Positions 6,169 to 51,413 of a stretch of 64,000 nt of DNA are shown here, one piece after another. Position 1 is the stretch's first letter, and the number at the start of each line of letters is the position of its first letter. Source of the DNA: Octopus sinensis (lineage: Eukaryota); contig NC_043001.1 in NCBI RefSeq assembly GCF_006345805.1, forward strand, positions 62,868,001 to 62,932,000, given 5' to 3'. Made by a program: the position numbers and the translations under genes. Below the pieces are notes generated by a model. It did not search any database and had not been told where the DNA came from. It saw nothing but the letters and a program-made list of their open reading frames with translations.

Positions 6169-6389
6169 TGTGGGGATGAGGTGAACCAGAAGTAAAGGGT
6201 CAGTGACGTCAACAGCTGAGGGGCCCTACCAGAAGAGCAGGAGTGAGGGGGATCACATGGGTGGAAGTAGGACAAGCATGGGCCTCTCTGCTCTGGTGCG
6301 CAGGGTGCCTTTTGGATGTAGCCTAGCTGGAAAATTGACACTGCAAGAGAACCTGAGAAGTAGGTGAATCACACTTTGCTCTTCATACA
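6169..6389 (+). repeat. 5' LTR of element 1
   Basis: Starts TGTGGGGATG, ends CATACA; homologous to 12587-12868. Confidence 0.85.
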
Positions 6390-6401
6390 AGCTATTTCAG
6401 C
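6390..6401 (+). promoter_or_regulatory. Putative primer-binding site of element 1 (AGCTATTTCAGC)
   Basis: Directly follows the LTR end; 11/12 identical to the motif after the LTR of element 2 (the difference is CpG to CpA). Confidence 0.7.
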
Positions 6402-7986
6402 CTTCATGTATTTTTTTTGTCCTCTTCCATGATATGTTAGCAAAAATAAGGATTGGTAGTGATGCCATCAGACCTGTCTGTGGCGAAGATGTTATCATCT
6501 GGATTCGAAAGATCAAGGTGGTGGCCAGGCTGCAAAGCATTGAAAATGTAGCAGGTCTCATAGCTCTGCTTTGAAGAGAAATGCATTGGCACTGTACCTT
6601 GAAATGGATGAAACAGACCAACTGGTTGCAGAGAAGATTGAACAGCGCTTAAAGGAAACATTTACAGAAGGATCATATGCTGCATTCACCGAGTTAGGAA
6701 AGGCCAGGAGGACATATATGCAGCAAAATTTCAGTGACTGACCATACTCTCTGGTTTTACTGGAGAAGGATTAGAAAAGTCAGCACAGTTGGCATTCACG
6801 AATGGCTTCCCTGATGAGATATTGTTGTGGCTGCAACAGCTGCCGAGTAGTGAGAAGATAATGAATGAACTCATCACTGAAGCCTGTGTGTCGATGCAAA
6901 ACGCCAAAATGCAGTGGCAATTGCAACTACAGAAGCCCACAGTATCATGTGACAATTGTAGAAGAATGAGGAGAGAAAAGTCACTGTAAAGCAGCCATTA
7001 CCATTTATGGGCCAGTATTTTAAGTATCAGGGACTGCACATGGCAAAGGACTGTGAGGAGTCAAAGCCTGAACCCATCTGCTACCAGTGCAAGTGGACAG
7101 AGCATATCACTAGAAACTGCAGCCAGGGAAAAGGCCACAGGGAAGTTGCTGCCTCTCAAACTTTCCATGTGAGCATGTAGAGGCTCTTGTACAGTTGCTG
7201 CCTATAGTTGATGTCCTGCTGGAGGAAAGGTGTTCAAAGTCCTCATGGATACAGGCTGTACAATGTCTCTTGTGACCCTAAAGGTGACTAAAACATGGAA
7301 GGGGATGAGTAGTGTTAGGGCAGTTGATGGCAGTGTAATGTAGAAGTGGAGATGGCAGTGTGGGGCACAACACTAAGAGAGCAAATAATAGAGATTGATC
7401 ATGTGGTAGAAGGAATTGATGTAGTGATGAGCAAGGATGTAATCAACTGCCTAGGAGGTGTCATTGTTAGTAGAGACATGGCTTTATTTGGTAGCGCAGG
7501 AGCATCATGCACTGTGAGTCTGCAACAAGAAAGAGGGAAGAGTTCCAGTGAGTACTGTACTGCTTACACCAGACATGTCAAACTCCCAGCCCATGCAGCA
7601 ATTTCATCTGGCCCACGGGACCATTTTGCTATCAGCATGAAACTGATCAAATGGTGGCATCAGCAGGACATTACATTATATATAGCATTGACTGCACTAC
7701 CTTTCTTACTAAGAGTATCACCAAAGTAGCAATAATTTAATACACAACTAGAAACAACACCACTGTAACTAATACACCCTGTTTGTGCAAACAAACACAT
7801 TAAAGAGGCATGATAACACAGTCACAAGTCTTAATTGTAACTGCAACAAAGCATGCTAGAAATGCCTCCTTCTATTCTCTAATTGCGTGTTGTGAAGCGC
7901 TACTAATCCCATAATGCACTGCAATTGCCGCCTTCAGGTGATCATTTTCATGGGACGTCATTCAGTAGTAGTAACTATCTATATCA

Positions 7987-10000
7987 ATGGCCAAGAGAAA
8001 AGTCAATGCTGAAAACAGAGCCTTTCAAATCCGGTGGCAAGCTGAGTACCTGTTTACTGACATTGATGGCAAACCCGCGTGTCTTAATTGTGGTACTAAC
8101 GTTGCTGTACTTAAAGAGTATAATCTCAAACGCTACTAGACAAAACATCAGGATAAGTATAAATACCTCGCTGCTGAGCAGAAGTAATGAAAGGTAGACG
8201 AGTTGAAGAGGAATCTCACATTACAAGAGACTTTTTTTAACCAAAGCAAAATCTCAAAGTGAAGCTGCTGTCAAAGCAAGTTTTATTGTGAGCTTTATTG
8301 TGGCAGAGGAGATCACAAAACCAGCTTGACCAGAGTTTGTGAAGAGCTGTGTGATGAAAATGTGTAACATTTTGTGTCCAGACAAGAACCAACTGAGTAT
8401 TAGCAGAAATATGGTTGCTAATCAGGTGTGTGAGATGGCCACTAATTTGAAAACACAGTTGATTGAAAAAGGAAAAGATTTTGTTGCATACTCTCTTGCT
8501 GTGGATGAGACTACTGACACGACCGATATGGCACAGCTGGCTATCATCATCTGTGGAGTGGACTCCAATTTGTTCATCATGGAGGAAATTTTGGACATTA
8601 AATTGATGCATGGGACAACAGGAAAGGACCTTTTTGAAAAAACATGTCAGTGTAACTGACATGAAACTGCCTTGCGACAAACTTGTTGGACTTATAATAG
8701 ATGGAGCACTGGTGATGTGCTGTGAAAAAAGTGGGCTAGTGGGTAGGATAGATTTAAAGATGCAAGAAGAGAACTGTGCTGGTGAGTTGACAACATATCA
8801 CTGCATTACACCAGGAAATGCTGTGCACTAAAGCCATGAAAATGGAACATGTAATGAGCACTGTAATGCAAACCATAAACTTTATCCAAGTCAAAAGGGT
8901 TAAATCACAGTCAATTTCAGTCTTTCCTGCTGGTTCAGTGATGTGCCTTATCATACAGAAGTGTGGTGGCTCAGTCAGAGAGAGGTCCTCAATATAGTTT
9001 TTGAGCTGGTTGAGGAGATATGTCAGTTCATGGACAGTAAAAGAAAAGAATACAAAGTTCTGCGGAATAATAAGGGGAAATGCGAGTTGGTGTTTCTGGT
9101 TGACAAAACTGCGCATCTCAATGTTTTAAACATCTAGCTCCAGGGATGGGATCACATGATCTGTGATACATATGACGCAGTGAAGGCATTTCAAGCGCAC
9201 TTATGGGAAACACAAATGCACGAATTGAACTTGTCTCATTTTCCCTATTGCCAAGTAATGTTCAGCACCACGGTGTTCCCAAAGCAACACTTTGCTGATA
9301 AATTGAATGTGCCCCACACTGAATTCACACAGGGCTTTAGTGACTTTGAAGCACAAAAAAATAATTTTGAGCTGCTTTGCAACCCATTTGCTGTCAATGT
9401 GGAAACTACCTCTACAGATTCAAACGAAGCTGATAGAACTGCAGTGTAATGAGACATTAAAAGCAAATTACAACTCTGGGGCCTGCATAGTTCACTTGCT
9501 TCATATATTGGCGAAAGCGATGTGGTGGACAACGAAAAACCTGGCTGATGACAGTCAAGGCTGATCTGGAACCCAACCTAGGCCCCGATATCTATGGCGT
9601 TCGCTGCTGGAATAAGGAGTGGTTGGAGATCACGCAGTCATTAGCTTCAAATCGCCAGGCCTGGTCGGCGTTTGTGAGAGATGCAGCATTGAGGATGAAT
9701 GAAGCCAGCTCAACCCACCCTGGGTGAATGCTGTCAAGTCAGTCAGTCTTCATACATGAAACAATTCCCCAGCTCCGTTTACACAAAGCTCAAATGCTGT
9801 CTTTGTTTGGAAGCACATATCTGTGTGAACAGCTGTTCTCTGTGATGAAGATGAATAAAATGTCACATAGGAGTTGTCTCACAGATGAACACCAGCAATC
9901 CATCATGAAAATCTCAACAACACAGAACCTAGCCCCAAACATCAATGAACTCATTGCCAAGAAAAGATGCCAAGTATGTAGCTTGGACAAAATTGCATAA
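7987..10000 (+). pseudogene. hAT transposase pseudogene
   Basis: MAKRKVNAENRAFQIRWQAEYLF...CLNCG...YNLKR (BED-like finger), YSLAVDETTDTTDMAQLAI (first catalytic D), DGALVMC, WLSQREVL, FGSTYLCEQLFSVMK (dimerisation domain). Multiple stops and frameshifts. Confidence 0.9.
9509..9747 (+). mobile_element. 5'-truncated RTE-type LINE 3' end inserted in the hAT transposase
   Basis: Encodes GGQRKTWLMTVKADLEP...NRQAWSAFVRDA...HPG*, followed by a (AGTC)n tail; 10-bp TSD CTTCATATAT (9499-9508) / CTTCATACAT (9748-9757). Confidence 0.75.
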
Positions 10001-12586
10001 AGAAAATTGAAAGTTTCGATTTATTATTTTAATTTTCACAGAAAGCACATTTTTGACAGGAGATATTTTTATGCAGAGCAAAATATTTTAAGTAATTTAA
10101 GTTGGAACAAATTTATATACCGTTTCAATACATGTTCATGTTCAAAAGGTTTTAGTCTGTTCAATAAATGTTTATCTTGTTCAGCCCACAACCTAAAGTG
10201 TGCTTTGAGTTTTGGCCCCCTGTGCAATTGACACTCTTGGCTTACACCATTGAAGATAAGGTTTTCAGGCAGCGTTCAATGTGGACAGTTGAATGGCGCT
10301 GGAAAGGTGAGCACCTGACACTTGAATAACAGGCTAAGCTTTTATCAGCATACCTTGAAAAGAGATGCCACGAATGAGTTTGAAGGAGAGGTAGAGGGAT
10401 GGATCAAGGAGGATATCCTAATCCAGTGGAAGGAGAAAGCAAAGAGCAGAGTGCTGCCACTAATGGCAGTGGTGCAGCCAACGAAGGGCAAGACAGGCTG
10501 GAACTGGACTTTTGAGAGCTGAATGACTATGTGTTTTGATACACTGGAAGCAAGATTACTGTTTGTGGGGAGATGATACAAGAATGGAGGCAGATGATGA
10601 GGGCTGCAACAATTGTCGACTTGAAGTTGGCATATCTGCAGCTCCATGTGAACAAGAAATTGTGGAAGTATCAGCTTGTGAGACATAAGGGCCAGACATA
10701 CTGTTTGACTAGGCTGGGTTTCAGGCTGAATTCTGCACCAAAGATAATAGCAACAGTGCTCAAATTTACCCTGGGAAAGGTGGATAAAGTAAAAAAGGCC
10801 ACCAATTCCTGTATGGACGACGACAGCCTTGGTAGACAAGACTGTCGTATCTGCTGCAGAGGTCACAGGGCATCTGAAGAAGTTCAGGCTAACCACAAAA
10901 CTACTGGAGCCAATGGTTAGAAGAGCTGCACTGGGGCATCTGAAGAAGTTTAGGCTAACCATGAAACCACTGGAGCCAATGGTTAGAAGAGCTGCACTGG
11001 GGCTTAAGCTACAAAGAGACAAGACAGGGGTGTTGGTATTTCAGAGAGGAAATGAGATTCTGGAACAGGGCACCAGCACGAACAGATAAGAACTGTTCTT
11101 GATGTGTGGGAGACTATTGGGCCACTATTCAATTGTGGGGTGGCTTCAAACAGCATGCAGCTATGTCAAGACATGAGCAGACAAGCTGTGAAGACAAAGT
11201 GGGAGAGAGGACCATGGTGATGATGCAGAAGATCCGAGAGAAGGTAAGAGCAGAAGACCCAGTAAGAGGAAGCTGGTATGTGCCCAAATTGAAGAAAGGA
11301 ACCATATAGTGTGATGCTAGCAGCATAGCAATAGGGGTTGCCCTGAAAATCAGGGGTATTGAAGTGGAGGATGTAGTTCAGTTCAGAAAAGTAGATGATT
11401 ACAACCACATAAACGTGGGTGAATTGGACAGTGCTGAAAGGGGTGAACCTGGTCCTGAGATGGGGACTGCATACTATTGAAATCCAAACTGATTCGGCTA
11501 CTGTTTGGATGGGTGGTATCAGTGATCACTAATGAATGGAAGGTTCAGACAAAAGGGGCTGCAGAGATGTTAGTGAAGCACCGCCTAGGGGTTCTAGGAG
11601 AGTTAGCCGTCAAATTTAGTTTGAAGTTGTACGTAGTCAGAAAGGAATATGGCAGACATTATAACCAGGATGGTTGGTAGTGCCAGAAGATCTGGAGCAG
11701 GGGAGCACTGCAGTGTGTCAGCCAGGTGACTGCATACCATGCATCTTATCAGTGTGGATAGAACCTTGTATCTTTCCAGGAAGGTTGACTCTGACGTTAC
11801 TAGGCAGAGCATTCAAAAAGTGATCAGGAGCTGTGACATATGTCAATCTCTCCAGGTGTGCATGAGTCAGGAAATATCTCAGTAAAGCATAACTGGAGAT
11901 GATTGGCAGTGGATGTGACACACTACCAGCAGGGGACACATCTCTCAATGGTTGACTGTGGACCAGGGCAGATGGCAATATGGGCACTGCAGATGAGGTT
12001 GCACAAACCTTGAACAAGGGCCCTGTGGATGTATTGCTGATGGACAATGGCACTGAAGTTTGTTTGGAGGTGCTGGATAAGTGTCATGTGCACTGCTTCT
12101 TCAGGCTGAGTAGAAACGAGATTGTGGAAAGATACTATCACATGCTCAAGGCCATGGCAGAGAGGGGATGCATCTCACCACTAGAGGAGATATTTTGGTA
12201 CAATATGTCACCCCAATCAGGACAGGCCAAAGAGTCATTTCCACACAGAGTGATATTCAGGTATGAATGACGACACCCATGTACAGCTTCACAGTGCCTT
12301 GTGAAAGAGAGAGAGAAAGAGCCTGCCTTCGTGCAGGTAGGAGGTGAGGTCTGGGTCAAGACTTCAAAGGCATGCAGCACATCTCAGTGAAATAGATGAA
12401 TACTGACGGCTGTTAATTTCAAAAATAATATCTCTGTGAATTGAATGTCATGTCATGTTTTGGATGTTTGAAGAATTGATGCTTCATTGGATAATGGAAG
12501 GGGTGGAGAGGACGTGAACCGGCACTCCATCCCCGTGTGGATTTTAACATGGAGTGAAGTGAGGTGATCTTTGAGATCAGGAGGCA

Positions 12587-12868
12587 TGTGGGGATGAAGT
12601 GAACCAGAAGTAAAGAGTCAATAATGTCAATGGCTGAGTGGCCCTACCGGAAGAGCAGAATAGAGGGAGGTTAAATGGACCTCTTCACTTTGAGGCAATT
12701 ACTGCAGATGGATGCATGTCAATGTATGATCTAGAGAGGGAATTTGCTGTTAGGTACTGGCCTTAGATTAGGTGGATAGGGCGCCTTTCAGATGTAACCC
12801 AGCTGGAAAGTTGATGCTGCAAGAGAACCCGAGAGGTAGGTGAATTGCACTTCCTTCCTCATACTACA
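12587..12868 (+). repeat. 3' LTR of element 1
   Basis: Starts TGTGGGGATG after gagatcaggaggca, ends CTACA, followed by the TSD CACAG. Confidence 0.85.
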
Positions 12869-19195: not shown

Positions 19196-19741
19196 TTTTA
19201 AAGTTAAAGAAAACATTCCTTATGAGATAACTTAATTTCACTTGTTAGTACCATGTTTTTCTACAAGATCTTTTCAAGAAATACAGTTACATAAACACAG
19301 GTGAAGCGAAACATTCTTTGATTGGTTTATTTATAATCCTTCCGAGTGAATATGCATATATCGCAGATAATCTTTTTCTTACTGTCAACTAATAGATGAC
19401 CTGCTGGTAATTGAAATGAAAATATTCTGAACTTAGAGCTAAACATTTGCAAATTGTTAGGCTTTTTGGAAAATTATGATTAATATTACTTTGTTATTCT
19501 AGACTTAGGGAGGAACGACCAAATTTATCTCACTACCTGTTTTTTCCACTGAACAAATTTTAAAACACTTGACATTTGTTTGATAGATAGATACCCGAGA
19601 ATTTTAAAAGGGTACATTACAAACGTACATTTATATTATTCTTTAAAAAAATGATCTGCTTACTTTTTATTTTATTATTTTTACTAGAACTTAATACAAT
19701 CATACAGTATAGTATAACCTATTGTAGCCGACTGAATAAAC

Positions 19742-20021
19742 TGTGGGATGATGTCAGCAGCTGGGTGCGTTGACCGGAAGCTGGGGCAACCAGAAGGGGC
19801 AGCTGTCAGGCGTGCGCAGGCAGCGGTCAATTGGGCCTTTTCCAACGTGGGTCGTCCAGGTGACAAGACGTGTGAGGACAGTCGCTAAGGGTTTGGGTGA
19901 GCAGCTGCTATCTTTAGTGTTCGGGTCAGGGCTGTGTCAAAGGATTAGCTACCACAGAAGGGTCTCCATCACGAGGAAGAGAAGGTAGGTGCCTTTATAT
20001 TCAAATCGTGCATACACCACA
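19742..20021 (+). repeat. 5' LTR of element 2
   Basis: TGTGGGATG...CACCACA, 273/280 identical to the 3' LTR. Confidence 0.97.
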
Positions 20022-20033
20022 AGCTATTTCGGC
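20022..20033 (+). promoter_or_regulatory. Putative non-canonical primer-binding site AGCTATTTCGGC (antisense to tRNA-Phe nt 1-12)
   Basis: Abuts the LTR end and has no TGG; exact reverse complement of GCCGAAATAGCT, the 5' end of human/Drosophila tRNA-Phe(GAA). Confidence 0.75.
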
Positions 20034-20074
20034 AGTTCTTAAACATTTACATTTCAACACGATTCGTTGCCACG

Positions 20075-20976
20075 ATGTCTGCAAAAATTAGGATCGCCAG
20101 CGATGTCGTCAGACCTTTTAATGGTGAAGGCAATGTAGTGGCCTGGATTCGCAAAATCAGGCTGGTGGCAAGACTGCAAGGTATAAGCGATGTGGCAAGT
20201 CTTATGGCGCTGTATTTAGAAGGGAGTGCCTTAACGCTATACCTTGAGATGGATGAAGAGGAATGGCTCAGCGAGGAGAACATAGAGCGACGCTTGCAGG
20301 ATGCCTACACGGAATGCGAATACACAGCTTTTGCTAAGCTAGGTGCGATCAGGTGGACGGGAAGCCAAGTGGATGACTATGCAGCAGAAGTTAGAAGGTT
20401 AGCGACTCTGGCTGGGTTTGCGGGAGAAGGGCTGGAGAGAGCAGCCCTGCTGGCGTTTGTGAATGGGTTCCCCGATGATGTAGGGATTCACCTACAACGA
20501 CTGCCCGGGATTAAAAAGATGGCGCTGAGCGAACTCGTGGCTCAGGCCCGCATGTTGACGAGACACTCTGGGTGGAAGGCGATAGCGATGGCAGTGACGG
20601 AGGCGCTACTGGAGACGCTGCCATTGATTGATGTGGAGGCCAAGGGGAAGATGTTCAAGGCCCTCATGGATACGGGCTGTACGACCACCCTTGTGACTTC
20701 GAGGGTGACGAAGGAATGGAACGGGGTGAGTAGTGTCCAGGCGGTCGACGGCAGCGAAATCCGTTGCAGAGGCAGCAGCAAGGTAGAGATAGTGGTGCGC
20801 GGCGCGAGCTAAGGCTGCATTCAATTGTGGCCGAACGCGTGATAGATGGAGTTGATGTGGTGATGGGGATGGACGCCATCAACTGCCTCGGTGGCGTCAG
20901 TGTTGTGGGAAATGAGGTCACGTTCGGAAGCGTGGGGGTGTCGTGCACTGCGAGTCAGGATCGCCAGAGAGAGTAG
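20075..20976 (+). pseudogene. gag + aspartic protease of element 2 (frameshift near 20810)
   Basis: ORF 20075-20812 (MSAKIRIASDVVRPF...ALMDTGCTTTLV) continues in another frame (VIDGVDVVMGMDAINCLGG). No CCHC knuckle. Confidence 0.9.
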
Positions 20977-20999
20977 AGCCCCGTGAGGGACTGCGCCGC

Positions 21000-23314
21000 T
21001 TACACCATTGAGAACAAAGACTTTCAGGCGGCGTTCGATGGTCAGTGGTGGACGATAGAGTGGCAATGGAAGGACAAGCCCCCAACGCTGGAAAACAGGG
21101 TGAGCTGTTACCAGCATACCCTGAAAGGCCGGCCACATCAGGGTCGAGTTTGAAGACGAGGTGGAGAGGTGGATCGAGGAAGGGGTCCTTGTCCCTTGGA
21201 AGGAGGAGGTAGCGGGTGGAGTGCTACCCCTGATGGCAGTGGTGCAGACTACGAAGGGAAAAGTCAGACTGGTGCTGGACTTCAGGGAGCTAAACCAGCA
21301 CATATCGTGTCACACGGGAGGTGAGGCGTTACGTGCGTGGAGACAGTCGACTTGAGATCGGCATACTTGCAGCTCCATGTGAGCGACAAACTGTGGCGAT
21401 ATCAGCTGGTGCGGTACAAGGGCCGGACATACTGTTTAACCAGACTGGGTTTCGGGCTGAATTCTGCTCCAAAGATCAAGGTGGCAGAGCTTAGGTCCGT
21501 CCTAGGGAAAGATGGCAAGATTAGAAAGGCCACCAGCTCCTACATTGACGACATTTTGGTGGACAAAACTGTAGTGCCAGTCGACGAGGTAGTTAGTCAT
21601 CTGGAGAAGTTCGGACTAATTGCTAAGCCACCGGAGTCGATTGAAGGGGGAGCCACGCTGGGGCTGAAGCTGCGAAGAGATGGATCGGGTGAATTGGTGT
21701 TCCGGAGAGGAAATGAGATCCCAGAGCTGAGTTCCAGCGTCAGCAGGAGAGAGCTGTTCTCGGTGTGTGGGAAGTTGGTCGGTCACTACCCGATCGCTGG
21801 ATGGCTGCGCATGGCATGTAGTTACACCAAGAGACGAGCAGAAGGGGAGAGGTGGGGGCGACAAGGTGGGAGAAGGGACGGTGGCAATGATGCAGGAAAT
21901 CCTAGAGAGGACGAGAGTGGAAGACCCGGTCAGGGGGATCTGGTACGTGCCCAAGACGGAATGCGGGACCGTCTGGTGTGATGCCAGCAGTATAGCGATA
22001 GGGGTGGTGTTGGCAATCGAAGGCGCTGCGGTGGAGGACGTGGCCTGGCTTCGGAAAGCAGATGATTTCAACCACATCAACGTCGCCGAATTAGACGCGG
22101 TGCTGAAAGGGGTGAACTTGGCCTTGAAATGGGGGCTGTGCACAATTGAAACCCGGACGGATTCAGCCACTGTGGTTGGCTGGGTAGGATCGGTGATCAC
22201 CGGTGAAAGGAGAGTGCGGACGAAAGGTGCTGCGGAGATGTTAGTGAAGCGCTGTCTAGGAGTTCTAGGTGAATTGATCGCCGAGTTCGGACTGAAGCTG
22301 AGCGTGGTTTTCGTGCCTTCGGAGAAAAACAGGGCAGACATACTGACCAGGGTGAAAAGAGCGTGGTTGGAAGAACCGGAGGAGGCCCCGAAAGGGATAG
22401 CTGCGGCGTGTCGTTTGGATGACTCTGAACTGAAGAGACTGCATGCTATGCATCACTTGGGTGTGGACAGGACCCTGTATCTGGCGAAGAAAATTGATAC
22501 TGACGTCACTAGGAGAAGCATACGGAAGGTGGTCGGGAGCTGCGACAGGTGTCAGTCCATCGACCCTGCTCCGTGTGGGCATGAACAGGGAAACCTTTCC
22601 GTGGAGCAGAACTGGAAAAGGCTAGCTGTGGATGTAACACACTACCGTCAGCAAATGTACCTCTCCATGGTCGACTGCGGGCCGGGCCGGCTGGCCATTT
22701 GGAGGGAGTTGAGATCGGGCATTGCTGACGAGATCACGCAGATCCTGAACGGGATATTCTTAGAGAGAGGTCCTATGGAAGAACTACTGATGGACAATGG
22801 GGCGGCGTTTCGTTCGGAAGCATTGAGGGTTATGCTTGATCGGTGGAATGTGCGACGCTTGTTCAGAGCAGCCTATAGGCCGAGCGGTAACGGGATCGTG
22901 GAGAGGCACCATCAGACAGTCAAGGCCATAGCGGAAAGAGGGCACATTTCGCCGCTTGAAGCAGTTTTTTGGTACAACTTGTCTCCCCGATCCAGACAAG
23001 CTGAAGAATCTGTGCTGCAGAGAGCTGTGTTCAAATATGAATGGAGGCACCCGAGCAAAGCGCCGGGGGATCACGAGGAAGAGAAGGGACCCGTTTGCGT
23101 GAAAATAGGGGAGGAAGTCTGGGTCAAGCCACCAAAGGCACGCTGTACGTCTCAATGGAGCAGAGGAACGGTGACGGCGGTCAATTCCAGAAACAACGTA
23201 TCCGTAGATGGAATGCCACGACATGTCTTGGACCTATGCAGGATTGTCGCTTCGACGGACGACGATTCTGGAGAGGGGGAAAACGAGGAGCCCAGCTTGA
23301 GAAGATCTCGATGA
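21000..23314 (+). pseudogene. pol (RT, RNase H, integrase) of element 2, frameshifted
   Basis: VDLRSAYLQ, TRLGFGLNSAPK, YIDDI (RT); CDASS, HINVAELDAV, TDS (RNase H); HAMHH...CDRC, LAVDVT, MDNG, NGIVER (HHCC + DDE integrase). Confidence 0.92.
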
Positions 23315-23375
23315 GCAAGGCGCTCTCCCAGTTGGATGGTGAACTACGACATGGAGCGGAGAGATTGTGATCTTT

Positions 23376-23390
23376 AAGATCAGGGTGGCA
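23376..23390 (+). promoter_or_regulatory. Atypical polypurine-tract position (AAGATCAGGGTGGCA)
   Basis: Immediately precedes the 3' LTR; the homologous GAGATCAGGAGGCA precedes the 3' LTR of element 1. Confidence 0.55.
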
Positions 23391-23670
23391 TGTGGGATGA
23401 CGTCAGCAGCTGGGTGCGTTGACCGGAAGCTGGGGCAACCAGAAGGGGCAGCTGTCAGGCGTGCGCAGGCAGCGGTCAATTGGGCCTTTTCCAACATGGG
23501 TCGTCCAGGTGACAAGACGTGTGAGGACGGTCGCTAAGGGTTTGGGTGAGCAGCTGCTATCTTTAGTGTTCGGGTCGGGGCTGTGTCGAAGGATTAGCTA
23601 CCACAGAAGGGTCTCCATCACAAGGAAGAGAAGGTAGGTGCCTTTATATTCAAATCGTGCACACACCACA
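23391..23670 (+). repeat. 3' LTR of element 2
   Basis: Direct repeat of 19742-20021, followed by the TSD TAAAC. Confidence 0.97.
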
Positions 23671-23895
23671 TAAACAACTGAGTACAATCTTGCTACGCTA
23701 GTAAATCTGTAAAATACCCATCGGATGCTTATCTGAAATGGAGAAAATACTTATAAACTTTATCAGGCTAAATAAAATTCGGTAAAAACGACTAAGCAAA
23801 GAGAAAGACGAATCCATATATGCATTGTCAATTGATTTATATATAGTTAGATTCTGACACGCATTTTGATTCACATGGCGGAGATCCAACATTTC

Positions 23896-26686: not shown

Positions 26687-27200
<514 letters not shown>

Positions 27201-27440
27201 AGGGTTTAAAGTATAAGAGGAAGAAGAATAAGTTGTAGAGAGAATGAGAATGATCAGGTGGAGCTGCAAAGAGATACATACTTGAAATATCCTTAGATTA
27301 AAAAACTGGTGTGTAGAATAGCTCTAGATTTTGCATAAATCAGTAAAAGTTTTGTTTACTGATTTCTGTATTAGAACAAGTGTTTTTCAGCTTTGCTCTG
27401 AACACCTATTGTATTTGTCACTGAGGGGACAAAATCGCCT

Positions 27441-27577
27441 AGTACTTATTCTATCAGTCCCTTTTGCTGAACTGGTAAGTTACGGTGACATAAACACACT
27501 AACATCAGTTGTCAAGCGATGGTGGGGCAACAAAGAGACACACAAATACACATACACACACATACATACATACACAT

Positions 27578-27616
<39 letters not shown>

Positions 27617-27777
27617 CATGATGGACTTCTTTTGAGTTTCTGTCTACCAAATCCACTCACAAGGCTTTGGTTGGCCCAAGGCCATTGTAGAAGACACCCA
27701 ATGTGCCACGCAATGGAAGTGAACCTGGAACCGTGTGGTTGGGAAGCAAGTTTCTTACAAAGTCACTCCTGGGCCCA
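27441..27777 (-). mobile_element. tRNA-derived SINE copy
   Basis: Same family as 1368-1690. Confidence 0.75.
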
Positions 27778-27804
27778 TATATATATATATATATATATGT
27801 ATGT

Positions 27805-28120
27805 ATCATCATCGTCATTTAACTGCTGCTTTCTGTGCTGGCATGGGTTGGACGGTTTGACTGAGGACTGGCGAGCCAGATGGCTGCACCAGGCTCCAAT
27901 CTGATCTGGCATAGTTTCTACCGCTGGATGCCCTTCCTAATGCCAACCACTCCGAGAGTGTTGTGGGTGCTTTTACATGCCACCGGCACAAGGGCCAGTC
28001 AGGTGGTACTGGCGATGGCCACGCTCAAATGGTGTTTTTTATGTGTCATCTGCACAGGAGCCAGTCCAGCAGCATTGGCAATGACCTCGCTCGAATGTTG
28101 TTCTACACCGCTGGCATAGG
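27805..28120 (-). mobile_element. RTE-LINE 3' UTR fragment
   Basis: catcatcgtcatttaac...gcatgggttggacggtttgactgaggactggcgagccagatggctgcaccaggctcc. Confidence 0.75.
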
Positions 28121-29099
28121 CCACGGGTTATGGTTTCATGAATCAAAACACTGCCCTGTGTTTAATGCGGCCAAATTACAGGTGGGAGACCAAGTGTTGT
28201 GGCCTACGGAGCTGAATAAGCATCCTAATTGTTACTAATAAAATATTGAAAACAAGCCAAAATATCACAGTCTCCTAGTATAAACTGACAAGGAATTACT
28301 TACAGTATGTCAGCAGTCTTGTGGAGAGGTCAGATCATTTCATTATACTTTCTTATATATATATATTGTCTGTTGCAGCTTGATCTTTGAACAAAAAATG
28401 CCTTTGAATGGTGAGTGAAGCAGTTGGTATTGGCCCACCACACTGTCTCTGACTACCAAGTGGTGCACAAGAGTGCAACAGCTTGCTTGTTAGTTGACTC
28501 GGAATGATGATGATACAGATTCTTCTTGGCCACAATAACTTTCAAGCCATTGGTCTAGGACTCCTCCACTTTGTCAGTTATCCAATATCCTTCTGCTGAC
28601 ATCTTTACCATATCCGTAGCATGGGAGGCTAAGGGGTTCCTAGCACTTACTCAAAGTGCCATCCCAGTCTGTAGACAAAAGGAGCAACTCACTTTCCCTT
28701 TTATGGGCCTGTCACTGATGTGGGTGCCATACTGTATATATATATATGTGTGTGTATATATATATATATATAGATAATATATATATAGTGGGTAAATCAA
28801 ATCTGAAAAAGAAGCAGTCTCTTAGTTGTAGAGCAGTAGAGTATATAGATAAAGATTGATATAGCTGGTCTGTGAGGTCACCCTGAATTTCATGTCCATA
28901 ATGTACTTGGCTTTACAGTGTCTCTTCAGACCCTAAGCTTATGGCCACTCTACAAAACAGAGGAGGAAAAACTTCATTACTCTGTCAACAACAGAGGATT
29001 TTCTCCCCTACTCATACTTTACCCTGTTATGTGGATCTCAGGACGCCAACAGGAATTTCCTGAAATGCAAGCAGTCTGAAGACCTCCTTCCTGTAGTTA

Positions 29100-29270
29100 A
29101 GGATGTTCCCTGAGTTGAGGGTGTCCTTTAATATCCCTGTCCATTTGGCTATTTATGTAGGAGCCTGGATTTTCTAGGATCATCCATGATATTACATGTG
29201 GAGTTCTGTTGTCCTTCAGTCGCCAAACATAGCTGGCTAAGGGCATAGCCAATATCTCAAAAGAGTGAGT
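29100..29270 (-). mobile_element. Penelope-type GIY-YIG C-terminal remnant
   Basis: LASYVWRLKDNRTPHVISWMILENPGSYINS resembles LSSKIWELKRNNIEFNLKWDIVRKARPYKN at 41005-41301. Confidence 0.5.
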
Positions 29271-29554
29271 GTTGTAAAGTTTAGTAACATCCCACAAACA
29301 CTAAAGTTTTCCCCCAAAATCTAGGGTTTTTATAACTGCTCAACTTGACTTTAAAGAATTGAAATCACATGAAAATATTCTTCAACTAATTTTCAGAATT
29401 CCTATATGAGCAGTTATTTCAACTAATGGGAAAACGACAATCATATTTCTTCAGCAATATGACGTTACATCATATTGCCAGCTACCACTAATTGGTGTCA
29501 CTATTTGAAATGGCTGCACGCTACAATATATATATATACATGTGTGTATATGTA

Positions 29555-29755
29555 TGTTTGTGTGTCTGTGTTTGTACCCCTAACATCACTTGAGAACTGA
29601 TGCTGGTGTGTTTATGTCCCTGTAACTTAGCGGTTTGGCAAAAGAGACTTATAGTACTAGACTTATAAAGAATAAGTCCTGAGGTTGATTTGCTCGACTA
29701 AAGGTGGTGCTCCAGCATGGCCACAGTCAGATGACTAAAACAAGTAAGAGTAAGA
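29555..29755 (+). mobile_element. tRNA-derived SINE, 3' half
   Basis: ...gtaacttagcggtttggcaaaagaga...aataagtcctgagg..gatttgctcgactaaaggtggtgctccagcatggccacagtc. Confidence 0.8.
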
Positions 29756-29929
29756 TATATTATGTAAGATCCTTGTCTAAATTAAAATTTTCTGACTTTT
29801 ATAAATGGTAGAACTAATTAAAAGATAAGTGAAAGAATTATTTGTTATTTAAACAAATTTATGCTTGAGATTATAAATTTTCATAACACCTCCTCCAATG
29901 CTTCCTCTCCTCAAAATTACTTGTCTTGC

Positions 29930-30200
29930 AAGTTACTTGCTGACCTTGCCAGTGCTGGAACCACATAAAAAGCACCCAATCCAGCTGTAAAAACCATGCC
30001 AAAACTGACCTCACCTGTGGTGATGCCATGTAAAAAGCACTCAGTCCACTTTGCTGGATGGTTGGTGTTAGGAAGGGCATCCAGTTATAAAAACCATGCC
30101 AAAACAGACAGTAGCCTGGGGTAGTTTCTACCTGGCTGGCTCCTGTCAAACCGTCCATTGCATGCCTGCATATAAGGCAGACATTAAATGATAATGAAAC
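29930..30200 (+). mobile_element. RTE-LINE 3' UTR fragment (sense)
   Basis: ...ggttggtgttaggaagggcatccag...aaaccgtccattgcatgcctgcatataaggcagacattaaatgataatga. Confidence 0.65.
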
Positions 30201-30799
30201 CATTTTGCAATTCTGAAGTTTTGGAAATGTTTTGAGCTAATATTTGGTGATATCTTTATTCACATTATCATCCAAGCATGCATGACAACAAAGCTTTATT
30301 GTATAAAAAGTAGACTTTACAGAGCTTATAAAATACAGTTGAAGTAATTAAATTTTTTTTTAATGATAAACACTTATGATAAATATTCTGATTGGTGAGC
30401 ATAAAATAATAAACAATTATAGATATTTTGATTGAAGATGAATTAAAACATCATCAAATGTTCTTTGGTCATCTTAATTTTGTAAGCACAAACATGGCTG
30501 TGAGGTTCAAAAACCTTTCTTTGCAACCACATGATTTTGGGTTCAGTCCCACTGCAGACCTTGGGCAGGTGTCTTCTACTATAGCTTCAGGCCACCCAAT
30601 CAATGCCTTGTGAGTGAATTTGGTCAACATTCACTCAGTGTTGATGTTGAATAAGCATGGAGAAAGCCCTGATGAACTACTTTCCCATTTTGGAACTTTT
30701 CTGTGTTATTACATACTCAAATGCAAGACACACAAAACTAAAAAAGAAAGATAATTTGAAAACTTTAATATGAAACTCTCCTATTTACTTTTCTTCTAG

Positions 30800-31012
<213 letters not shown>

Positions 31013-31342
31013 TAGCTGTACCCATCCCATCTAGTATATTGAGAACTAATTCATTGTTGAATGTATCCTTTTCCAGGAGAGCAAGGTAAGATGTAAGGGA
31101 TATTGAGCTGACATTTCTAACAGATCAAGTGACTGTTTAGTGGTTTTACAAAGTTCAATGGTGGATGCTGTGGCCTGTAGTGTTTTTCTTGCAAGAAACT
31201 CACTTCTGTAATGCCTCTAGATAACAGTCCTTTCCTGGTCTAGTCTAAAGGAAGATTTCATCTCAGCAGTGTGAGGTAACAAGACACTTTAATTAAACAG
31301 AATCATTGAAAGGATCATAGTCCATTGTGATTTTCACTGCTA

Positions 31343-33183
31343 GGACAGTCCACTATCAGCTTGACTTTTAGGACAGTGCATAATCAACTTGACTGTTAAG
31401 AGAGTCTATAATCAACTTGACTGTTAGGAAAGTCTGCAAAAAATTTGACTGGTGGGACAGTCTACTGATGAATTTCTTGCTAAAACCATACACTATCAAC
31501 TTGTAGAACAGTCCACTCTCAACTTGACTGGTAGGACAGTCCACTATCAACTTGACTAGATGTATAGTCCACTATGAACTTGGCTGGTGGGACAATCCAC
31601 AATCAACTTGACTGGCAAGACAGTGCACTCTCCACTTGACTTGTAAGGTTCTGCTATCATTTTGCCTCTTAGGACAGTCCTCTATCACCTAGACTGACGG
31701 GACAGTTCACTATCACCTTGAGTGAGATGACTGTGCACTATCAATTGACTTGTAGGACAGTTTGTTATCAACATAACTGGTTGGACAGGACACTGTGAAT
31801 TTCTCTGTTTGAAGAATCCACTATTCAATTAACTGGTAAAACATGCCACTATTAACTTGACTGATAGGAAAGTCCACTTTTAACTTGATTAGTGGCACAG
31901 TTGACAATCAGTTGCATTGATGGGACATTCCACTACTCACTCGACCGATGGAACCTTCCACTATTAGTTTGACTGGGAGGTGGTACAGTCCAATGTGAAC
32001 TTGGGTGATGGGACAGTCCACTATCAACTTGACTGCTAGGGCAGTCCTATATCAACTTGAATGATGGTATAGTCTACTATGAACTTAACTGATGGGACAG
32101 TACACTATCAACTTCACTGGTAGGTCAGTCCACTATTGACTTGACTTGTAGAACAGTCTACTGTGAACGTAACTGGTAAAGCAGTTCATTATGAACTTGA
32201 CTGGTAGGACAGTGTATTACCTGCTTCACTGGTATGACAGTCCAGTATCAATTTGGCTTGCTAGACAGTCCACTGTCAATAATCAGATAGAACAGTCTCC
32301 TATCATTTTGTCAGCTGGGACAGTCTACTATCAACTTGATAGCAGAATGAACTTGTCTTGACTCAACAATTTGCTATCAATTTATCAACTTGACTAAAAG
32401 ACAGTCCATTATCAACTGGACTTGTAGGACAATCCACTATTGACATCACCTGTGAAATTGTCCTCTGTTAACTTGACTGATAGGACAGTCTGCTTTGTAC
32501 TTGACTGATGGGACCCTCCACTAATTACTTGACTGACATGACAGTCCTCTAACAACTCGTGATATGACAGCCCAGACTCAACATAACTGGAATAACAGTC
32601 CTCTACCAAATTGACTAGTGGGATAGTCCACTATCAACTTGACTGGATGTATAGTCCACTATGAACTTGGCTGATGGGACTATCCATTTTGAACTTGACT
32701 GATAGGATAGTTTCTTAACTTTGGCAATATGACAGGACTATGAACATGACTGAATAATTCTGTCAACTTGACTGCTAGAACAGTCTACTATCAACTTGTC
32801 AGATGGGACAGTCACCTTTCAGCTTGTTTGATGGGACAATCCACTATCAATTTAGCTGATTATACACACCCCTATGAAGTGGACTAGTAGGACAGTCCAC
32901 TATCAGCTTGTTTGAAGGGACAGTCTACTATCAGCTTAACTAATGGGGCAGTCCACTATCAACTTCCCTGTCAGTTTGACTAGTGTGATAGTCCAGTGAC
33001 TGGTGGGTCATTCCACTCTCAGCATGGCTGGTAGGACAGTTCACTATCAACTTGGCTGGTAGGACAGTCCATTACCATCTGGGCTGGTGGAACAATCCAC
33101 TATCAACTGGCTTGGTGGAACAGTCCATTATCAACTTGACTGATGGTCTACTATCAACCTGACTGGTGGGACTGTTCACTATC
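31343..33183. repeat. 28-bp minisatellite, about 65 degenerate units, consensus GGACAGTCCACTATCAACTTGACTGGTA
   Basis: Period read directly, e.g. gaacagtccactctcaacttgactggta / ggacagtccactatcaacttgactagat / gtatagtccactatgaacttggctggtg; lies in KRR1 intron 3. Confidence 0.92.
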
Positions 33184-33528
33184 TAAATGCACAAACAAAG
33201 CCTGTTGCCATCCTTCAAAGCCTCCAAACTATATATTAGGGATTCCAACTAAATGGCCGCATCTCTGGATGACCTGCTTCTTTCTTGTTACACAGTTACT
33301 TTCAGTAGTTCTAGACATTAACTTCCTGAATCTGTCTGGAAGTATGACCTGCAAAGGTCAATGGCACTATGCCTTCTCACTTGACTTACAACAGAAAGAA
33401 TGACCTCCTCCCCCTGAACCACAAGTTGAATGCTTCTCCCAATGTATCAATTAACAATAAACAAATGTTGATCGTAGTGAGAAATAAATGAATGTTATTG
33501 ATTATTTTTTACTGTTTTATCTTTTTAG

Positions 33529-33696
<168 letters not shown>

Positions 33697-34158
33697 TGAT
33701 TTTTCTACTGGAAATGTTTTTCCTTTATCAACTTTGTCTTTATGGCTTTCATCATACAACTGAACTATTAAGATGTTCCTTTTGCAGCCACAAGGTTCCC
33801 AATTGGGTCCCACTGCTTAGGCAAATATTGTTGTAACCTTGGATCATCGTCATACCTTGGGAACAAAATTGGGTAGATGGAAATTGTATTGAAATCAATC
33901 AAATATATTGTACCTGTAATTCAAAGGTACAACCTCATCACATTCTATGTCATGCTGATTCTGCCCAACAATTATGTTAAGGGTAGAATGGGTATGTGGA
34001 ATATTCAGCCATGTTAATGTATGTATGTGTGTGTGTATGTATAAATAGTTAATAAACCACTTAATTTAACACAATCACCTTTTGGTCTTTCAAAGTAGAC
34101 ATGAAAATGTTACATTATTTACATTTGACAGATATTTGTCCTCATCTTGTTTGTTGTT

Positions 34159-34204
34159 AACACAACGTTTCAGCTGATATACCCTCCAGCCTTCATCAGG
34201 TGTC
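34159..34204 (-). ncRNA. Minimal type-I hammerhead ribozyme motif
   Basis: The minus strand reads GACAC CTGATGA A GGCTG gagggtatat CAGCT GAAA CGT T GTGTT: stem I GACAC/GTGTT, intact core boxes, stem II, and a palindromic ACGT stem III as in dimeric Penelope-type minimal HHRs. Confidence 0.7.
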
Positions 34205-34256
34205 TTGGAGAAATTTCGAACCTAGGTTCTCATTTCTAAGGTATTTTTCGATGTTG

Positions 34257-34301
<45 letters not shown>

Positions 34302-34315
34302 TCACTGCTTGGAAT

Positions 34316-35165
34316 CATCATCATCATTTAACGTCCGCTTTCCATGCTAGCATGGGTTGGACAATTTGACTGAGGACTGGCGAACCAGATGGCTGCACCA
34401 GGCTCCAATCTGATCTGGCAGAGTTTCTACAACTGGATGCCCTTCCTAACGCCAACCACTCTAAGAATGTAGTGGGTGCTTTTATGTGTCACTGGCACAA
34501 GGGCCAGTCTGGCAGTACTGGCAATGGCCACGATCAAATGGTGTTTTTTACGTGCCACCTGCACAGGAGTCAGTCCAGCGGCACTGGCAACGTCCTCACT
34601 CGAATGTTTTGTTCACATGCCACCAGCACAAGTGCCAGTAAGGCGATGCTGGTAATGATCATGCTCAAATGGTGCTTTTTACGTGCCACCGGCATGGAAG
34701 CTAGACTGCTGCTCTGGCAGTGATCCCGCTCAGATGGAGCTGTTAGCGCTCCACTGGCACGGGTGCCAGTCATCGAATTTGGTTCAATTTCGATTTCACT
34801 TGCCTCAACAGGTCTTCACAAGCAGAGTTTTGTGTCCAAAGAAGGAAAGGTACACATAAGTGGGCTGACTACACCCCTGGTAAAGGCCATGGGTTATGGT
34901 CTCACTTGTCTTGCCGGGTCTTCTCACGCACAGCATATTTCCAAAGGTTACCTCAACTGCTAGGCTGTGGCACTTTTACACACAGCTATCCCCATCCATT
35001 CTCGCCACATGACCATACCAGCACAATCGTCTCTCTTGCACACCACAACTGATGCTTCTTAGGTCCAACTTTTCTCTCAAGGTACTTACACTCTGTCGAG
35101 TATGCACACTGACATTACACATCCATTGGAGCATACTGGCTTCATTTCTTGCGAGCTTACGCATA
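34316..35165 (-). mobile_element. 5'-truncated RTE LINE (C-terminal ORF + 3' UTR)
   Basis: RKLARNEASMLQWMCNVSV...RRLCWYGHVARM; (GAT)n tail on the minus strand. Confidence 0.85.
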
Positions 35166-36700: not shown

Positions 36701-36861
36701 TGTTGTCCTTTTCCTCTAATATATACCTGCTAGCACGGAAGCCTAATATGGATCTCTCGCTCCAGCTTCAGCTGTGAACTTGGAACCTAACGGATGACCA
36801 ATTATAGTACTTACTCAGTGCACCTATTTGTTTATATCACCAGTGAACTAAACCCCGCATA

Positions 36862-36895
<34 letters not shown>

Positions 36896-36909
36896 GTATA
36901 TATATATAC

Positions 36910-50395: not shown

Positions 50396-50408
50396 CATAA
50401 TATATATC

Positions 50409-50492
<84 letters not shown>

Positions 50493-50611: not shown

Positions 50612-50643
<32 letters not shown>

Positions 50644-50874: not shown

Positions 50875-50908
<34 letters not shown>

Positions 50909-51379: not shown

Positions 51380-51413
<34 letters not shown>

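What the first reader, a model, noticed from the sequence alone, without database searches (positions are those of the whole stretch)
20015..20040. LTR retrotransposon family apparently primed by the first 12 nt of tRNA-Phe rather than a tRNA 3' end
Seen: the 5' LTR end is fixed at 20021 by the 3' LTR and the TAAAC TSD. It is followed with no gap by AGCTATTTCGGC, with no TGG (anti-CCA) PBS nearby. The diverged element 1 has AGCTATTTCAGC in the same position (6390-6401) while the sequence beyond it differs, so the motif is conserved. Established: metazoan tRNA-Phe(GAA) begins GCCGAAATAGCT, whose exact reverse complement is this motif. The polarity puts tRNA nt 12 next to U5, where the primer 3'-OH must sit. 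Known exceptions to 3'-CCA priming are half-tRNA priming (copia, Ty5) and Tf1/sushi self-priming; I do not recall a 12-nt 5'-fragment primer. Inference: minus-strand synthesis is primed by a 5' tRNA-Phe fragment cut after nt 12 (tRNA nt 13-14, CA, do not pair with the LTR end). It could be made by the element's RNase H, as in Tf1, or be a host tRF-5.
Basis: partly seen in the sequence, partly recalled or inferred. Interest (0 to 1): 0.85.

Follow-up and report, generated by a model that had tools for sequence, protein, structure and literature searches.

The report
Retrotransposons primed by tRNA 5' ends
A small octopus retrotransposon, and some 60 distant relatives from molluscs, crustaceans and environmental DNA, all carry a 12-base site next to their left repeat that is the exact complement of the first 12 bases of a host tRNA, which points to a so far undescribed way of starting reverse transcription.

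Summary
Element 2 (19742-23670) has 280-bp TG..CA LTRs and a TAAAC target duplication. AGCTATTTCGGC sits at LTR+1 (20022-20033). It is the exact complement of nt 1-12 of human and Drosophila tRNA-Phe.

Two further Octopus copies, plus Argonauta, Aplysia and a barnacle, carry the same 12-mer at LTR+1. Across 84 related loci (pol 36-56% identical) the LTR-end/12-mer junction ACAAGCTAT is the most widely shared 9-mer of the element (52 loci; the best other 9-mer is in 27).

There are 61 distinct junctions. All fit "complement of GCCNNNN-UAGCU", that is, variable acceptor-stem bases followed by the conserved U8-U12 bases. Three variants equal published tRNA starts: Phe, Lys3(UUU) and Lys(CUU).

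The gag ATG follows a median of 7 nt later, so a conventional PBS has no room. No element contains a complement of its own 12-mer, so Tf1-type self-priming is rejected.

Best explanation: the minus-strand primer is a host tRNA 5' fragment ending at nt 12. This is inferred from sequence; no primer was observed. How the cut is made is open. I found no prior report in the searchable literature. I rate it a new variant of tRNA-fragment priming.

The parts
19737..19741 (+). Target-site duplication TAAAC, 5' copy (element 2)
   Evidence: the same pentamer directly flanks both LTRs.
19742..20021 (+). 5' LTR of element 2 (TG...CA, 280 bp)
   Evidence: (family D9): 97.5-98% identical to 23391-23670.
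20022..20033 (+). Putative primer-binding site AGCTATTTCGGC. It is the reverse complement of tRNA-Phe nt 1-12. tRNA nt 12 lies next to U5.
   Evidence: for the sequence. for the tRNA-Phe sequence. for conservation at LTR+1 in relatives.
20075..20812 (+). gag and the start of protease (DTGC). It is the first of several frame-shifted ORF pieces in this defective copy.
   Evidence: In relatives gag gives weak Retrotrans_gag hits and CCHC knuckles.
20764..23314 (+). pol remnants in the order PR, RT (YIDD), DUF7047 linker, RNase H (RVT_3/RNase_H type), integrase. At least three frameshifts break them.
   Evidence: The AlphaFold model of an intact relative best matches retroviral RT p66.
23368..23382 (+). 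Conserved hairpin TGATCTTTAAGATCA just upstream of the polypurine tract
   Evidence: The same hairpin is seen in about 28 relatives. Some have a TGATG/CATCA stem, which is a compensatory change.
23383..23390 (+). Degenerate polypurine tract GGGTGGCA (relatives have GGGGGGAG)
23391..23670 (+). 3' LTR of element 2
23671..23675 (+). Target-site duplication TAAAC, 3' copy
6169..6389 (+). 5' LTR of the older, diverged element 1
6390..6401 (+). Decayed PBS AGCTATTTCAGC of element 1 (one CG-to-CA change)
12565..12586 (+). Hairpin TGATCTTTGAGATCA plus PPT-like GGAGGCA of element 1
12587..12864 (+). 3' LTR of element 1. The end is approximate. The duplication reads TACAG on the 5' side and TACAC on the 3' side.

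Best explanation
The 12-mer is the minus-strand primer-binding site of a compact LTR retrotransposon family. Elements are about 3.7-4.4 kb and read LTR, 12-nt PBS, gag, PR-RT-linker-RNase H-IN, hairpin, G-rich PPT, LTR.

The proposed primer is the 5'-terminal 12 nucleotides of a host tRNA. In octopus, Argonauta, Aplysia and a barnacle it would be tRNA-Phe; in relatives it would be tRNA-Lys3, tRNA-Lys(CUU) and others. The tRNA 5' strand (acceptor-stem nt 1-7, U8, A9, and D-stem nt 10-12) anneals to the genomic RNA. A cut after nt 12 leaves a 3'-OH directly opposite the last base of U5, and DNA synthesis runs from there into U5-R.

Plus-strand strong-stop synthesis later copies the primer to its physical 5' end. 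That would explain why conservation stops exactly at tRNA nt 1, and why the site stays identical to the tRNA while everything around it diverges.

Shown here: the anatomy, the conservation, the exact matches to three published tRNA 5' ends, the absence of any other PBS, and the absence of a self-primer. Inferred: that priming happens this way. The source of the cut is unknown. My preferred guess is cleavage in place at the end of the 12-bp RNA duplex by the element's own RNase H, as shown for the 11-nt self-primer of Tf1. A host nuclease or a pre-made 5' tRF is about equally possible.
For: 1. Position. The 12-mer lies at LTR+1 in both window elements. The same holds in two more Octopus copies whose downstream flanks differ. 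It also holds in Argonauta, Oratosquilla, Aplysia, Amphibalanus and four metagenome elements whose LTR ends were fixed independently by LTR pairs; four of those eight loci also show a target duplication.

2. Conservation. An unbiased k-mer count over 84 loci puts ACAAGCTAT in 52 loci. The best other 9-mer is in 27. Information content is about 0 bits on both sides of the site.

3. tRNA-like pattern. There are 61 distinct junctions. Every variant is the complement of GCC/NNNN/UAGCU or UAGCG. Variation is confined to the acceptor-stem positions.

4. Exact matches to nt 1-12 of published tRNAs: Phe, Lys(CUU) and Lys3. The other common 12-mers occur as genuine tRNA 5' ends, Phe or Thr, in phage and prokaryote contigs.

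5. The same discrete variants recur in unrelated branches of a rough pol tree. That fits capture of external templates better than drift.

6. The gag ATG follows 0-104 nt after the site, median 7.

7. No self-primer. No reverse complement within 2 mismatches exists anywhere in any locus. The best duplex of an element's own 12-mer with its LTR averages -10.8 kcal/mol. Heterologous 12-mers average -10.9 and shuffles about -11. A perfect duplex would give -18.7 to -22.7.

8. RNase H is present. Four acidic residues of that domain, in the WCDAS, NVAELD, TDS and NKAD motifs, are invariant in the 17-sequence alignment. Assigning them as the catalytic carboxylates is my reading of the motifs, not a tool result. 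The linker-plus-RNase H arrangement resembles retroviral RT.
Against: No experiment or small-RNA data were available. No primer was seen.

The host tRNA sets could not be read. The octopus tRNA-Phe 5' end is assumed from the identity of human and Drosophila sequences. About 60% of the junctions (CGC, CTA, CAC, CCC types and singletons) are not assigned to a named eukaryotic tRNA.

Oratosquilla carries GCCUAGAUAGCU, which is not the metazoan tRNA-Phe start known to me.

A 12-nt 5' tRNA fragment is shorter than the usual tRF-5 classes of 14-16 nt and longer (my own knowledge). A cut inside the D stem has no known enzyme.

The Argonauta LTR ends in AAG rather than CA.

The tree is a crude neighbour-joining tree without support values.
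Confidence: 0.78

Rival explanations
1. Tf1/sushi-type self-priming. The site would pair with the first bases of the element's own transcript, which is then cut to make the primer.
For: The site is 12 nt long, directly abuts U5 and lacks TGG, as in Tf1-like elements (background: PMC4600332).
Against: No locus contains a reverse complement of its own 12-mer within 2 mismatches. GU-tolerant duplex energies with the upstream 450 nt equal those of heterologous and shuffled 12-mers. Elements whose LTRs cannot be aligned share identical 12-mers, which would not be expected if the partner lay inside the LTR.
Confidence: 0.02
2. Conventional priming from a tRNA 3'-CCA end at a PBS that was overlooked.
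For: It is the default for LTR retroelements.
Against: In element 2 there is no TGG between the LTR and the gag ATG. Across 51 junctions the gap between the 12-mer and the ATG is 0-104 nt, median 7, too short for an 18-nt PBS in most. Nothing else near the junction is conserved.
Confidence: 0.02
3. The 12-mer binds the tRNA 5' strand, or a 5' tRF, for a purpose other than priming. Examples are packaging, translation control, or serving as a target of host tRF-guided silencing. Priming would then occur by some other, unseen route.
For: Pairing with a tRNA 5' end is what the sequences show. Use as a primer is inference. 3' tRFs are known to target PBS sites (background).
Against: The polarity puts the end of the duplex exactly at the last base of U5 in every element, which is the geometry a primer needs. 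No other candidate PBS exists. A silencing target would be selected against, not held invariant across a clade.
Confidence: 0.1
4. The primer is a different small RNA that shares a tRNA-like 5' sequence, for example a transcript of a tRNA-derived SINE, rather than a mature tRNA.
For: Only 12 nt are constrained, so the rest of the primer's parent molecule is unknown. The octopus window is rich in SINE-like repeats.
Against: Three variants equal the starts of housekeeping tRNAs conserved from fly to human. Hosts as different as molluscs and barnacles share the Phe type, which a lineage-specific SINE would not explain.
Confidence: 0.05

Closest known systems
Half-tRNA priming of Drosophila copia and yeast Ty5 (review: PMC5371799). 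Candida Tca2 is cited from my own knowledge only.
   Same: A host tRNA is used after an internal cut. The primer is a 5' tRNA fragment with a new 3'-OH, and the PBS does not begin with TGG.
   Different: In those elements the cut lies in the anticodon stem-loop (about nt 39, my own knowledge) and the PBS pairs with internal tRNA bases. They belong to Ty1/copia. Here the duplex starts at tRNA nt 1 and ends at nt 12 inside the D stem, so the whole primer is paired. Several different tRNAs are used. The elements have the PR-RT-RH-IN gene order.
Self-priming of Tf1, Tj1 and the Tf1/sushi group (PMC4600332; the 11-nt length and the RNase H cut are from my own knowledge of Levin 1995-1997)
   Same: A short RNA duplex that begins at the physical 5' end of the primer RNA and abuts U5, 11 nt there and 12 nt here. 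The primer must be released by a cut at the duplex end. In Tf1 the element's RNase H does this.
   Different: In Tf1 the 5' end belongs to the element's own mRNA. Here no self-complement exists and the partner matches host tRNAs.
Canonical tRNA 3'-end priming of retroviruses and Ty3/gypsy elements
   Same: The primer comes from a host tRNA. The PBS sits at U5+1. tRNA-Lys3 and tRNA-Phe also serve as conventional primers.
   Different: The opposite end of the tRNA is used, 12 nt rather than 18, and cleavage is required.
Cigr-1 of Ciona, the 'Gypsy-Cigr' class (Simmen and Bird 2000; recalled from memory, paper not held)
   Same: A very small element of about 4 kb with LTRs of about 250 bp and one gag-pol reading frame. 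The clade is reported in molluscs (PMC6238403).
   Different: Membership was not tested because no Cigr-1 sequence was available. I do not know what PBS was reported for Cigr-1.

Membership tests
LTR retrotransposon | Direct LTRs with TG..CA ends, flanked by a target-site duplication | tested here: met
   for the window. for relatives, with 5-bp duplications in Argonauta, Oratosquilla, Aplysia and L031.
LTR retrotransposon | gag and pol with protease, RT, RNase H and integrase | tested here: met
   The window copy is frame-shifted. Relatives have intact ORFs of 1000-1100 aa.
Ty3/gypsy (Metaviridae) in the broad sense | Domain order PR-RT-RH-IN and a gypsy-type Gag | tested here: inconclusive
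   The order is met. Retrotrans_gag hits are below threshold. RT, RH and IN are closer to retroviral entries than to Ty3 in PDB sequence and fold searches. Gypsy-type RNase H Pfam families do not hit.
BEL/Pao | Pao-type protease and associated Pfam families (Peptidase_A17, DUF1758/1759, DUF5641) | tested here: not met
   None appears at E <= 0.1 in three full-length pol proteins.
Tf1/sushi self-priming elements | PBS complementary to the 5' end of the element's own transcript | tested here: not met
Half-tRNA (copia/Ty5-type) priming | PBS complementary to an internal tRNA segment ending in the anticodon stem-loop | tested here: not met
   Complementarity runs from tRNA nt 1 to nt 12 only. The flanks are unconserved.
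Canonical tRNA 3'-end priming | PBS beginning TGG, complementary to the 3' end of a tRNA including CCA | tested here: not met
tRNA 5'-fragment priming (proposed here) | The 12-mer equals the complement of nt 1-12 of a tRNA of the same host | tested here: inconclusive
   Met against published human and Drosophila Phe, Lys3 and Lys(CUU) sequences. Host genomes could not be scanned. Most other variants are unassigned.
tRNA 5'-fragment priming (proposed here) | Strong-stop minus-strand DNA carries the 12-nt tRNA fragment at its 5' end | not testable with these tools
   Needs wet-lab data or small-RNA/cDNA data.
Cigr-1 clade | RT or pol grouping with Ciona Cigr-1 | not tested
   No reference sequence or paper was available.

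The most novel reading that the evidence does not exclude
A whole, widespread clade of animal LTR retroelements starts reverse transcription from a 12-nt primer that its own retrovirus-like RNase H cuts off the 5' end of a host tRNA annealed to the genome. This would be a hybrid of tRNA priming and Tf1-style RNA-duplex cleavage, with repeated switching among tRNA-Phe, tRNA-Lys and other tRNAs. 5' tRNA fragments and halves would then be natural competitors or regulators of these elements.
Probability: 0.3. Interest if true: 0.9.

Novelty: new variant of a known kind. Interest (0 to 1): 0.8.

Why it matters
It would add a further way for LTR retroelements to obtain a primer, beside the tRNA 3' end, the half-tRNA and the self-primer. 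It would be a way shared by a large and little-studied clade of marine and other invertebrate elements.

There are practical consequences. To my knowledge, PBS finders such as LTRdigest and LTR_FINDER compare only tRNA 3' ends. They would therefore score these elements as lacking a PBS.

It also gives a concrete function to test for the 5' end of tRNAs in retroelement biology. This mirrors the known targeting of PBS sites by 3' tRFs. Abundant 5' tRFs and halves have the same sequence as the proposed primer and could compete with it or supply it.

The short 12-bp site and the defined cut after U12 make a clean in-vitro system for asking how an RNase H or a host nuclease measures a cut from an RNA 5' end.

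Tried and rejected
1. Self-priming was tested in two ways and rejected.

2. A hidden CCA-type PBS is rejected for lack of TGG and lack of room.

3. ARAGORN on the window and on 80 loci found no tRNA gene that could name the hosts' tRNAs. Rfam found nothing in the window.

The hit in PMC11962134 concerns a conventional PBS. Subscription journals and Repbase notes are not covered.

5. The Cigr-1, Tf1 (1996) and Ty5 (1999) papers are not held.

6. Two proteins (Petrolisthes, Nymphon) could not be traced to contigs.

7. Scanning IMG/VR for tRNA genes that begin with the unassigned 12-mers gave only phage and prokaryote tRNAs. This is a weak proxy for eukaryote hosts.

8. A strict regular expression for the PPT hairpin missed most cases. 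The looser listing was used instead.

9. Superfamily placement stays open after Pfam, PDB and fold searches.

Full report
WHAT IS IN THE WINDOW

The window comes from an Octopus genome. The best protein hits are O. sinensis and O. bimaculoides at 79-90% identity.

Element 2 spans 19742-23670.
- Its two 280-bp LTRs are 97.5-98% identical (19742-20021 and 23391-23670). They start TG and end CA.
- They are flanked by TAAAC on both sides (19737-19741 and 23671-23675).
- Directly after the last base of the 5' LTR comes AGCTATTTCGGC (20022-20033). This is the only exact copy in 64 kb.
- The gag ATG is at 20075, and there is no TGG in between.
- The coding part reads gag, protease (DTGC), RT (YIDD), a linker that matches Pfam DUF7047, an RNase H of the RVT_3/RNase_H type, and integrase. 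Several frameshifts break it, so this copy is dead.

Element 1 spans 6169 to about 12864 and is an older relative.
- Its LTRs are about 85% identical.
- It is interrupted by roughly 2.9 kb of decayed hAT-type transposon.
- At LTR+1 it has AGCTATTTCAGC (6390-6401), one CG-to-CA change. The sequence that follows is unrelated to that of element 2.

THE tRNA MATCH

Human tRNA-Phe-GAA begins GCCGAAATAGCTCAG (PMC11706605). A Drosophila tRNA-Phe 5' probe reads ...CTGAGCTATTTCGGC (PMC7038984). The 12-mer is therefore the exact complement of nt 1-12 of a tRNA that is identical from fly to human over this stretch.

The polarity places tRNA nt 12 opposite the first base after U5. A primer's 3'-OH has to sit there. 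tRNA nt 13-14 (CA) cannot pair with the LTR end (CA).

I could not read the octopus tRNA genes. None lies in the window or in the loci I fetched.

RELATIVES

The RNase H-integrase ORF has hundreds of relatives: Argonauta, Aplysia, mantis shrimp, crabs, amphipods, barnacle, sea spider, and many environmental contigs of about 4 kb.

With an alignment of 17 full pol proteins I fetched 80 metagenome loci whose pol is 36-56% identical to the Argonauta protein. I also fetched genomic loci from Argonauta, Oratosquilla, Aplysia and Amphibalanus, and three further Octopus loci.

Where both LTRs are present, their ends fix the junction independently of any motif. This was possible in eight loci.
- L023, L025, L031 and L080.
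- Argonauta (duplication TCAGT).
- Oratosquilla (duplication CAGAA).
- Aplysia (duplication GATCA).
- Amphibalanus.

L031 also shows a duplication (GAGTC); in the other loci none was evident. In each of the eight a 12-mer of the same kind sits at LTR+1. The O. sinensis and O. bimaculoides copies have AGCTATTTCGGC at LTR+1 with downstream flanks that differ from element 2.

HOW CONSERVED IS IT

A count that assumes nothing settles this. Among all 9-mers, ACAAGCTAT (LTR end plus the first six bases of the site) occurs in 52 of 84 loci. The best 9-mer from anywhere else, coding sequence included, occurs in 27.

Around the site the information content is near zero on both sides. It is high only for T-ACA and the 12 bases (that profile was anchored on the motif, hence the k-mer control).

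I count 61 distinct junctions, 53 of them preceded by ACA.

THE VARIANTS LOOK LIKE tRNA 5' ENDS

The sites are not all the Phe type. Counts of distinct junctions:
- AGCTATTTCGGC: 17
- AGCTATCGCGGC: 12
- AGCTATCTAGGC: 11
- AGCTATCACGGC: 8
- CGCTACCGAGGC: 2
- AGCTATCCGGGC: 2
- Nine further types, once each, including AGCTAGCCGGGC.

Read as their complements, all are GCC-NNNN-UAGCU, or UAGCG in one type. The variable positions are the acceptor-stem bases. The constant ones are U8, A9, G10, C11 and U12, the part that many tRNAs share. Conservation ends exactly at tRNA nt 1.

Two of the minor types equal published tRNA starts. GCCCGGAUAGCU is human tRNA-Lys3 (PMC8715211). GCCCGGCUAGCU is human tRNA-Lys(CUU) (PMC12140204).

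The three common unassigned types do occur as real tRNA 5' ends in phage and prokaryote contigs. All ten tRNAs that start GCCTAGATAGCT are Phe. GCCGCGATAGCT and GCCGTGATAGCT are Thr or Phe. This shows only that they are tRNA-like. It does not name the eukaryotic tRNA.

On a rough neighbour-joining tree of the RNase H-integrase region, the same discrete types recur in unrelated branches. The Oratosquilla element (CTAGGC type) sits among Phe-type mollusc and crustacean elements. That is what primer switching among a fixed set of host RNAs would give. Drift would not.

RIVALS

Self-priming of the Tf1 kind needs a complement of the site at the transcript start inside the LTR. No locus has one within two mismatches anywhere on the strand.
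- Best GU-tolerant duplex of each 12-mer with its own upstream 450 nt: -10.8 kcal/mol on average.
- Other elements' 12-mers: -10.9.
- Shuffles: about -11.
- A true partner would give -18.7 to -22.7.

A conventional PBS has no room. The gag ATG follows the 12-mer after 0-104 nt, median 7, and in five elements immediately.

That the site binds tRNA for another purpose cannot be excluded without experiments. However, the geometry is exact in every element, and no other PBS exists.

MECHANISM, WITH ITS STATUS

Shown:
- A 12-nt site at U5+1 that is complementary to the 5' terminus of host tRNAs.
- The site is held across a deep clade and switches among tRNAs.

Inferred:
- It is the minus-strand PBS.
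- The primer is the tRNA's first 12 nt, with a 3'-OH made by a cut after nt 12.
- Plus-strand strong-stop synthesis copies the primer to its physical 5' end. This would explain both the sharp outer boundary of conservation and the constant refreshing of the site from the tRNA.

Every variant has T at site position 4, which pairs with A9. I note, as speculation from general knowledge, that tRNAs with G9 often carry m1G9, which would block pairing and copying.

The cutting enzyme is unknown. In Tf1 the element's RNase H cuts an RNA duplex at the end of an 11-nt self-primer (cited in PMC4600332; details from my own knowledge). The 12-nt duplex here has the same layout.

These elements encode an RNase H. 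Four acidic residues of that domain are invariant in the alignment, and I read them as the catalytic carboxylates. The domain follows a linker domain, and an AlphaFold model (mean pLDDT 74) matches HIV-1 RT p66 and foamy virus PR-RT best. A host nuclease, as proposed for copia and Ty5 (PMC5371799), or a ready-made 5' fragment is about as likely.

WHAT FAMILY IS THIS

The anatomy is constant:
- LTRs of 140-460 bp.
- The 12-nt site.
- Gag of about 270 aa, with weak Retrotrans_gag hits and CCHC knuckles.
- Pol of about 1000 aa.
- A hairpin, then a G-rich PPT.
- Total length about 3.7-4.4 kb.

BEL/Pao signatures are absent. Ty3 is not among the closest solved structures by sequence or, within the 50 best matches listed, by fold; retroviral RT and IN are.

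From memory, the size and layout recall Cigr-1 of Ciona and the 'Gypsy-Cigr' class, which has been reported in molluscs (PMC6238403). I could not test this.

NOVELTY

Known exceptions to 3'-end tRNA priming are the half-tRNA of copia and Ty5 and the self-primer of Tf1 (PMC5371799; PMC4600332). Ten full-text searches, including the 12-mers as strings, found no report of a PBS complementary to a tRNA 5' terminus. Subscription journals and Repbase notes are outside that library, so prior notice cannot be excluded.

I rate it a new variant of a known kind, namely priming by a cleaved tRNA. Interest is 0.8.

HANDLING NOTE

No whole element was printed, assembled, repaired or turned into a consensus. 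Sequence output was limited to windows of at most 901 bases and short junction snippets.

For motif scans and self-BLAST my scripts did hold slices of the window and the fetched loci that span whole (mostly defective) retrotransposon copies. They also wrote temporary copies of fetched loci to the scratch folder, which I deleted afterwards.

A mobility assay that needs an intact rebuilt element is referred, not proposed.

Noticed in passing
window 23368-23390 and 12565-12586; L083 5414-5435, L031 4850-4871, L023 3950-3971, L081 5659-5680, L084 5322-5337: A conserved hairpin (TGATCnnnnGATCA) lies directly upstream of the G-rich polypurine tract and the 3' LTR in about 28 family members. Argonauta, the barnacle, L040 and others have TGATG...CATCA instead, a compensatory change that keeps the stem. 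It may help define the plus-strand primer.
   Followed up: partly
window about 7900-10300 (ORFs 8339-8659 and 9728-10000): Element 1 is split by roughly 2.9 kb of foreign sequence. It gives weak, sub-threshold hits to DUF4371 and to the hAT dimerisation domain, so it is probably a decayed hAT-type DNA transposon.
   Followed up: partly
L003, L007, L017, L045, L051, L053, L070 and others (first 90-150 bases equal the last): Many metagenome contigs of about 4 kb have identical ends. This is the pattern expected when an assembler collapses the two LTRs of a multicopy element into a circle. It could also reflect one-LTR circles or tandem copies. L012 and L021 carry the 12-mer twice, about 4.0 kb apart.
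   Followed up: no
L082 1757-1768 (Oratosquilla oratoria): This mantis shrimp element uses AGCTATCTAGGC although its pol groups with the Phe-type mollusc and crustacean elements. The same variant dominates a separate clade of metagenome loci (L021-L027, L032, L050, L066, L073, L075). The matching eukaryotic tRNA is not identified.
   Followed up: partly
L081 1964-1975 and 6020-6031 (Argonauta hians): Both LTRs, 100% identical, end in ...GATCAAG rather than the usual ...ACA. The 12-mer still follows directly and a 5-bp duplication (TCAGT) is present.
   Followed up: no
window 27805-28099, 34314-34608, 47507-47596, 26948-37037: There are several copies of a SINE-like repeat that begins ATCATCATCATC(A/G)TTTAACG...CATGGGTTGGAC (families D8 and D12). 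It was not characterised.
   Followed up: no
window 31336-33183; 50400-50931; 51263-51909: A 28-bp minisatellite of about 67 copies, long AT, ACAT and ATG microsatellites, and a run of N (an assembly gap) near 51263.
   Followed up: no
pol of the family (Argonauta P0006 residues about 322-380; window 21337-21981 piece): Pfam DUF7047 lies between RT and RNase H. The modelled RT-linker-RNase H matches retroviral p66 over its whole length. That suggests a retrovirus-like connection domain plus a cellular-type RNase H in a 4-kb invertebrate element.
   Followed up: partly
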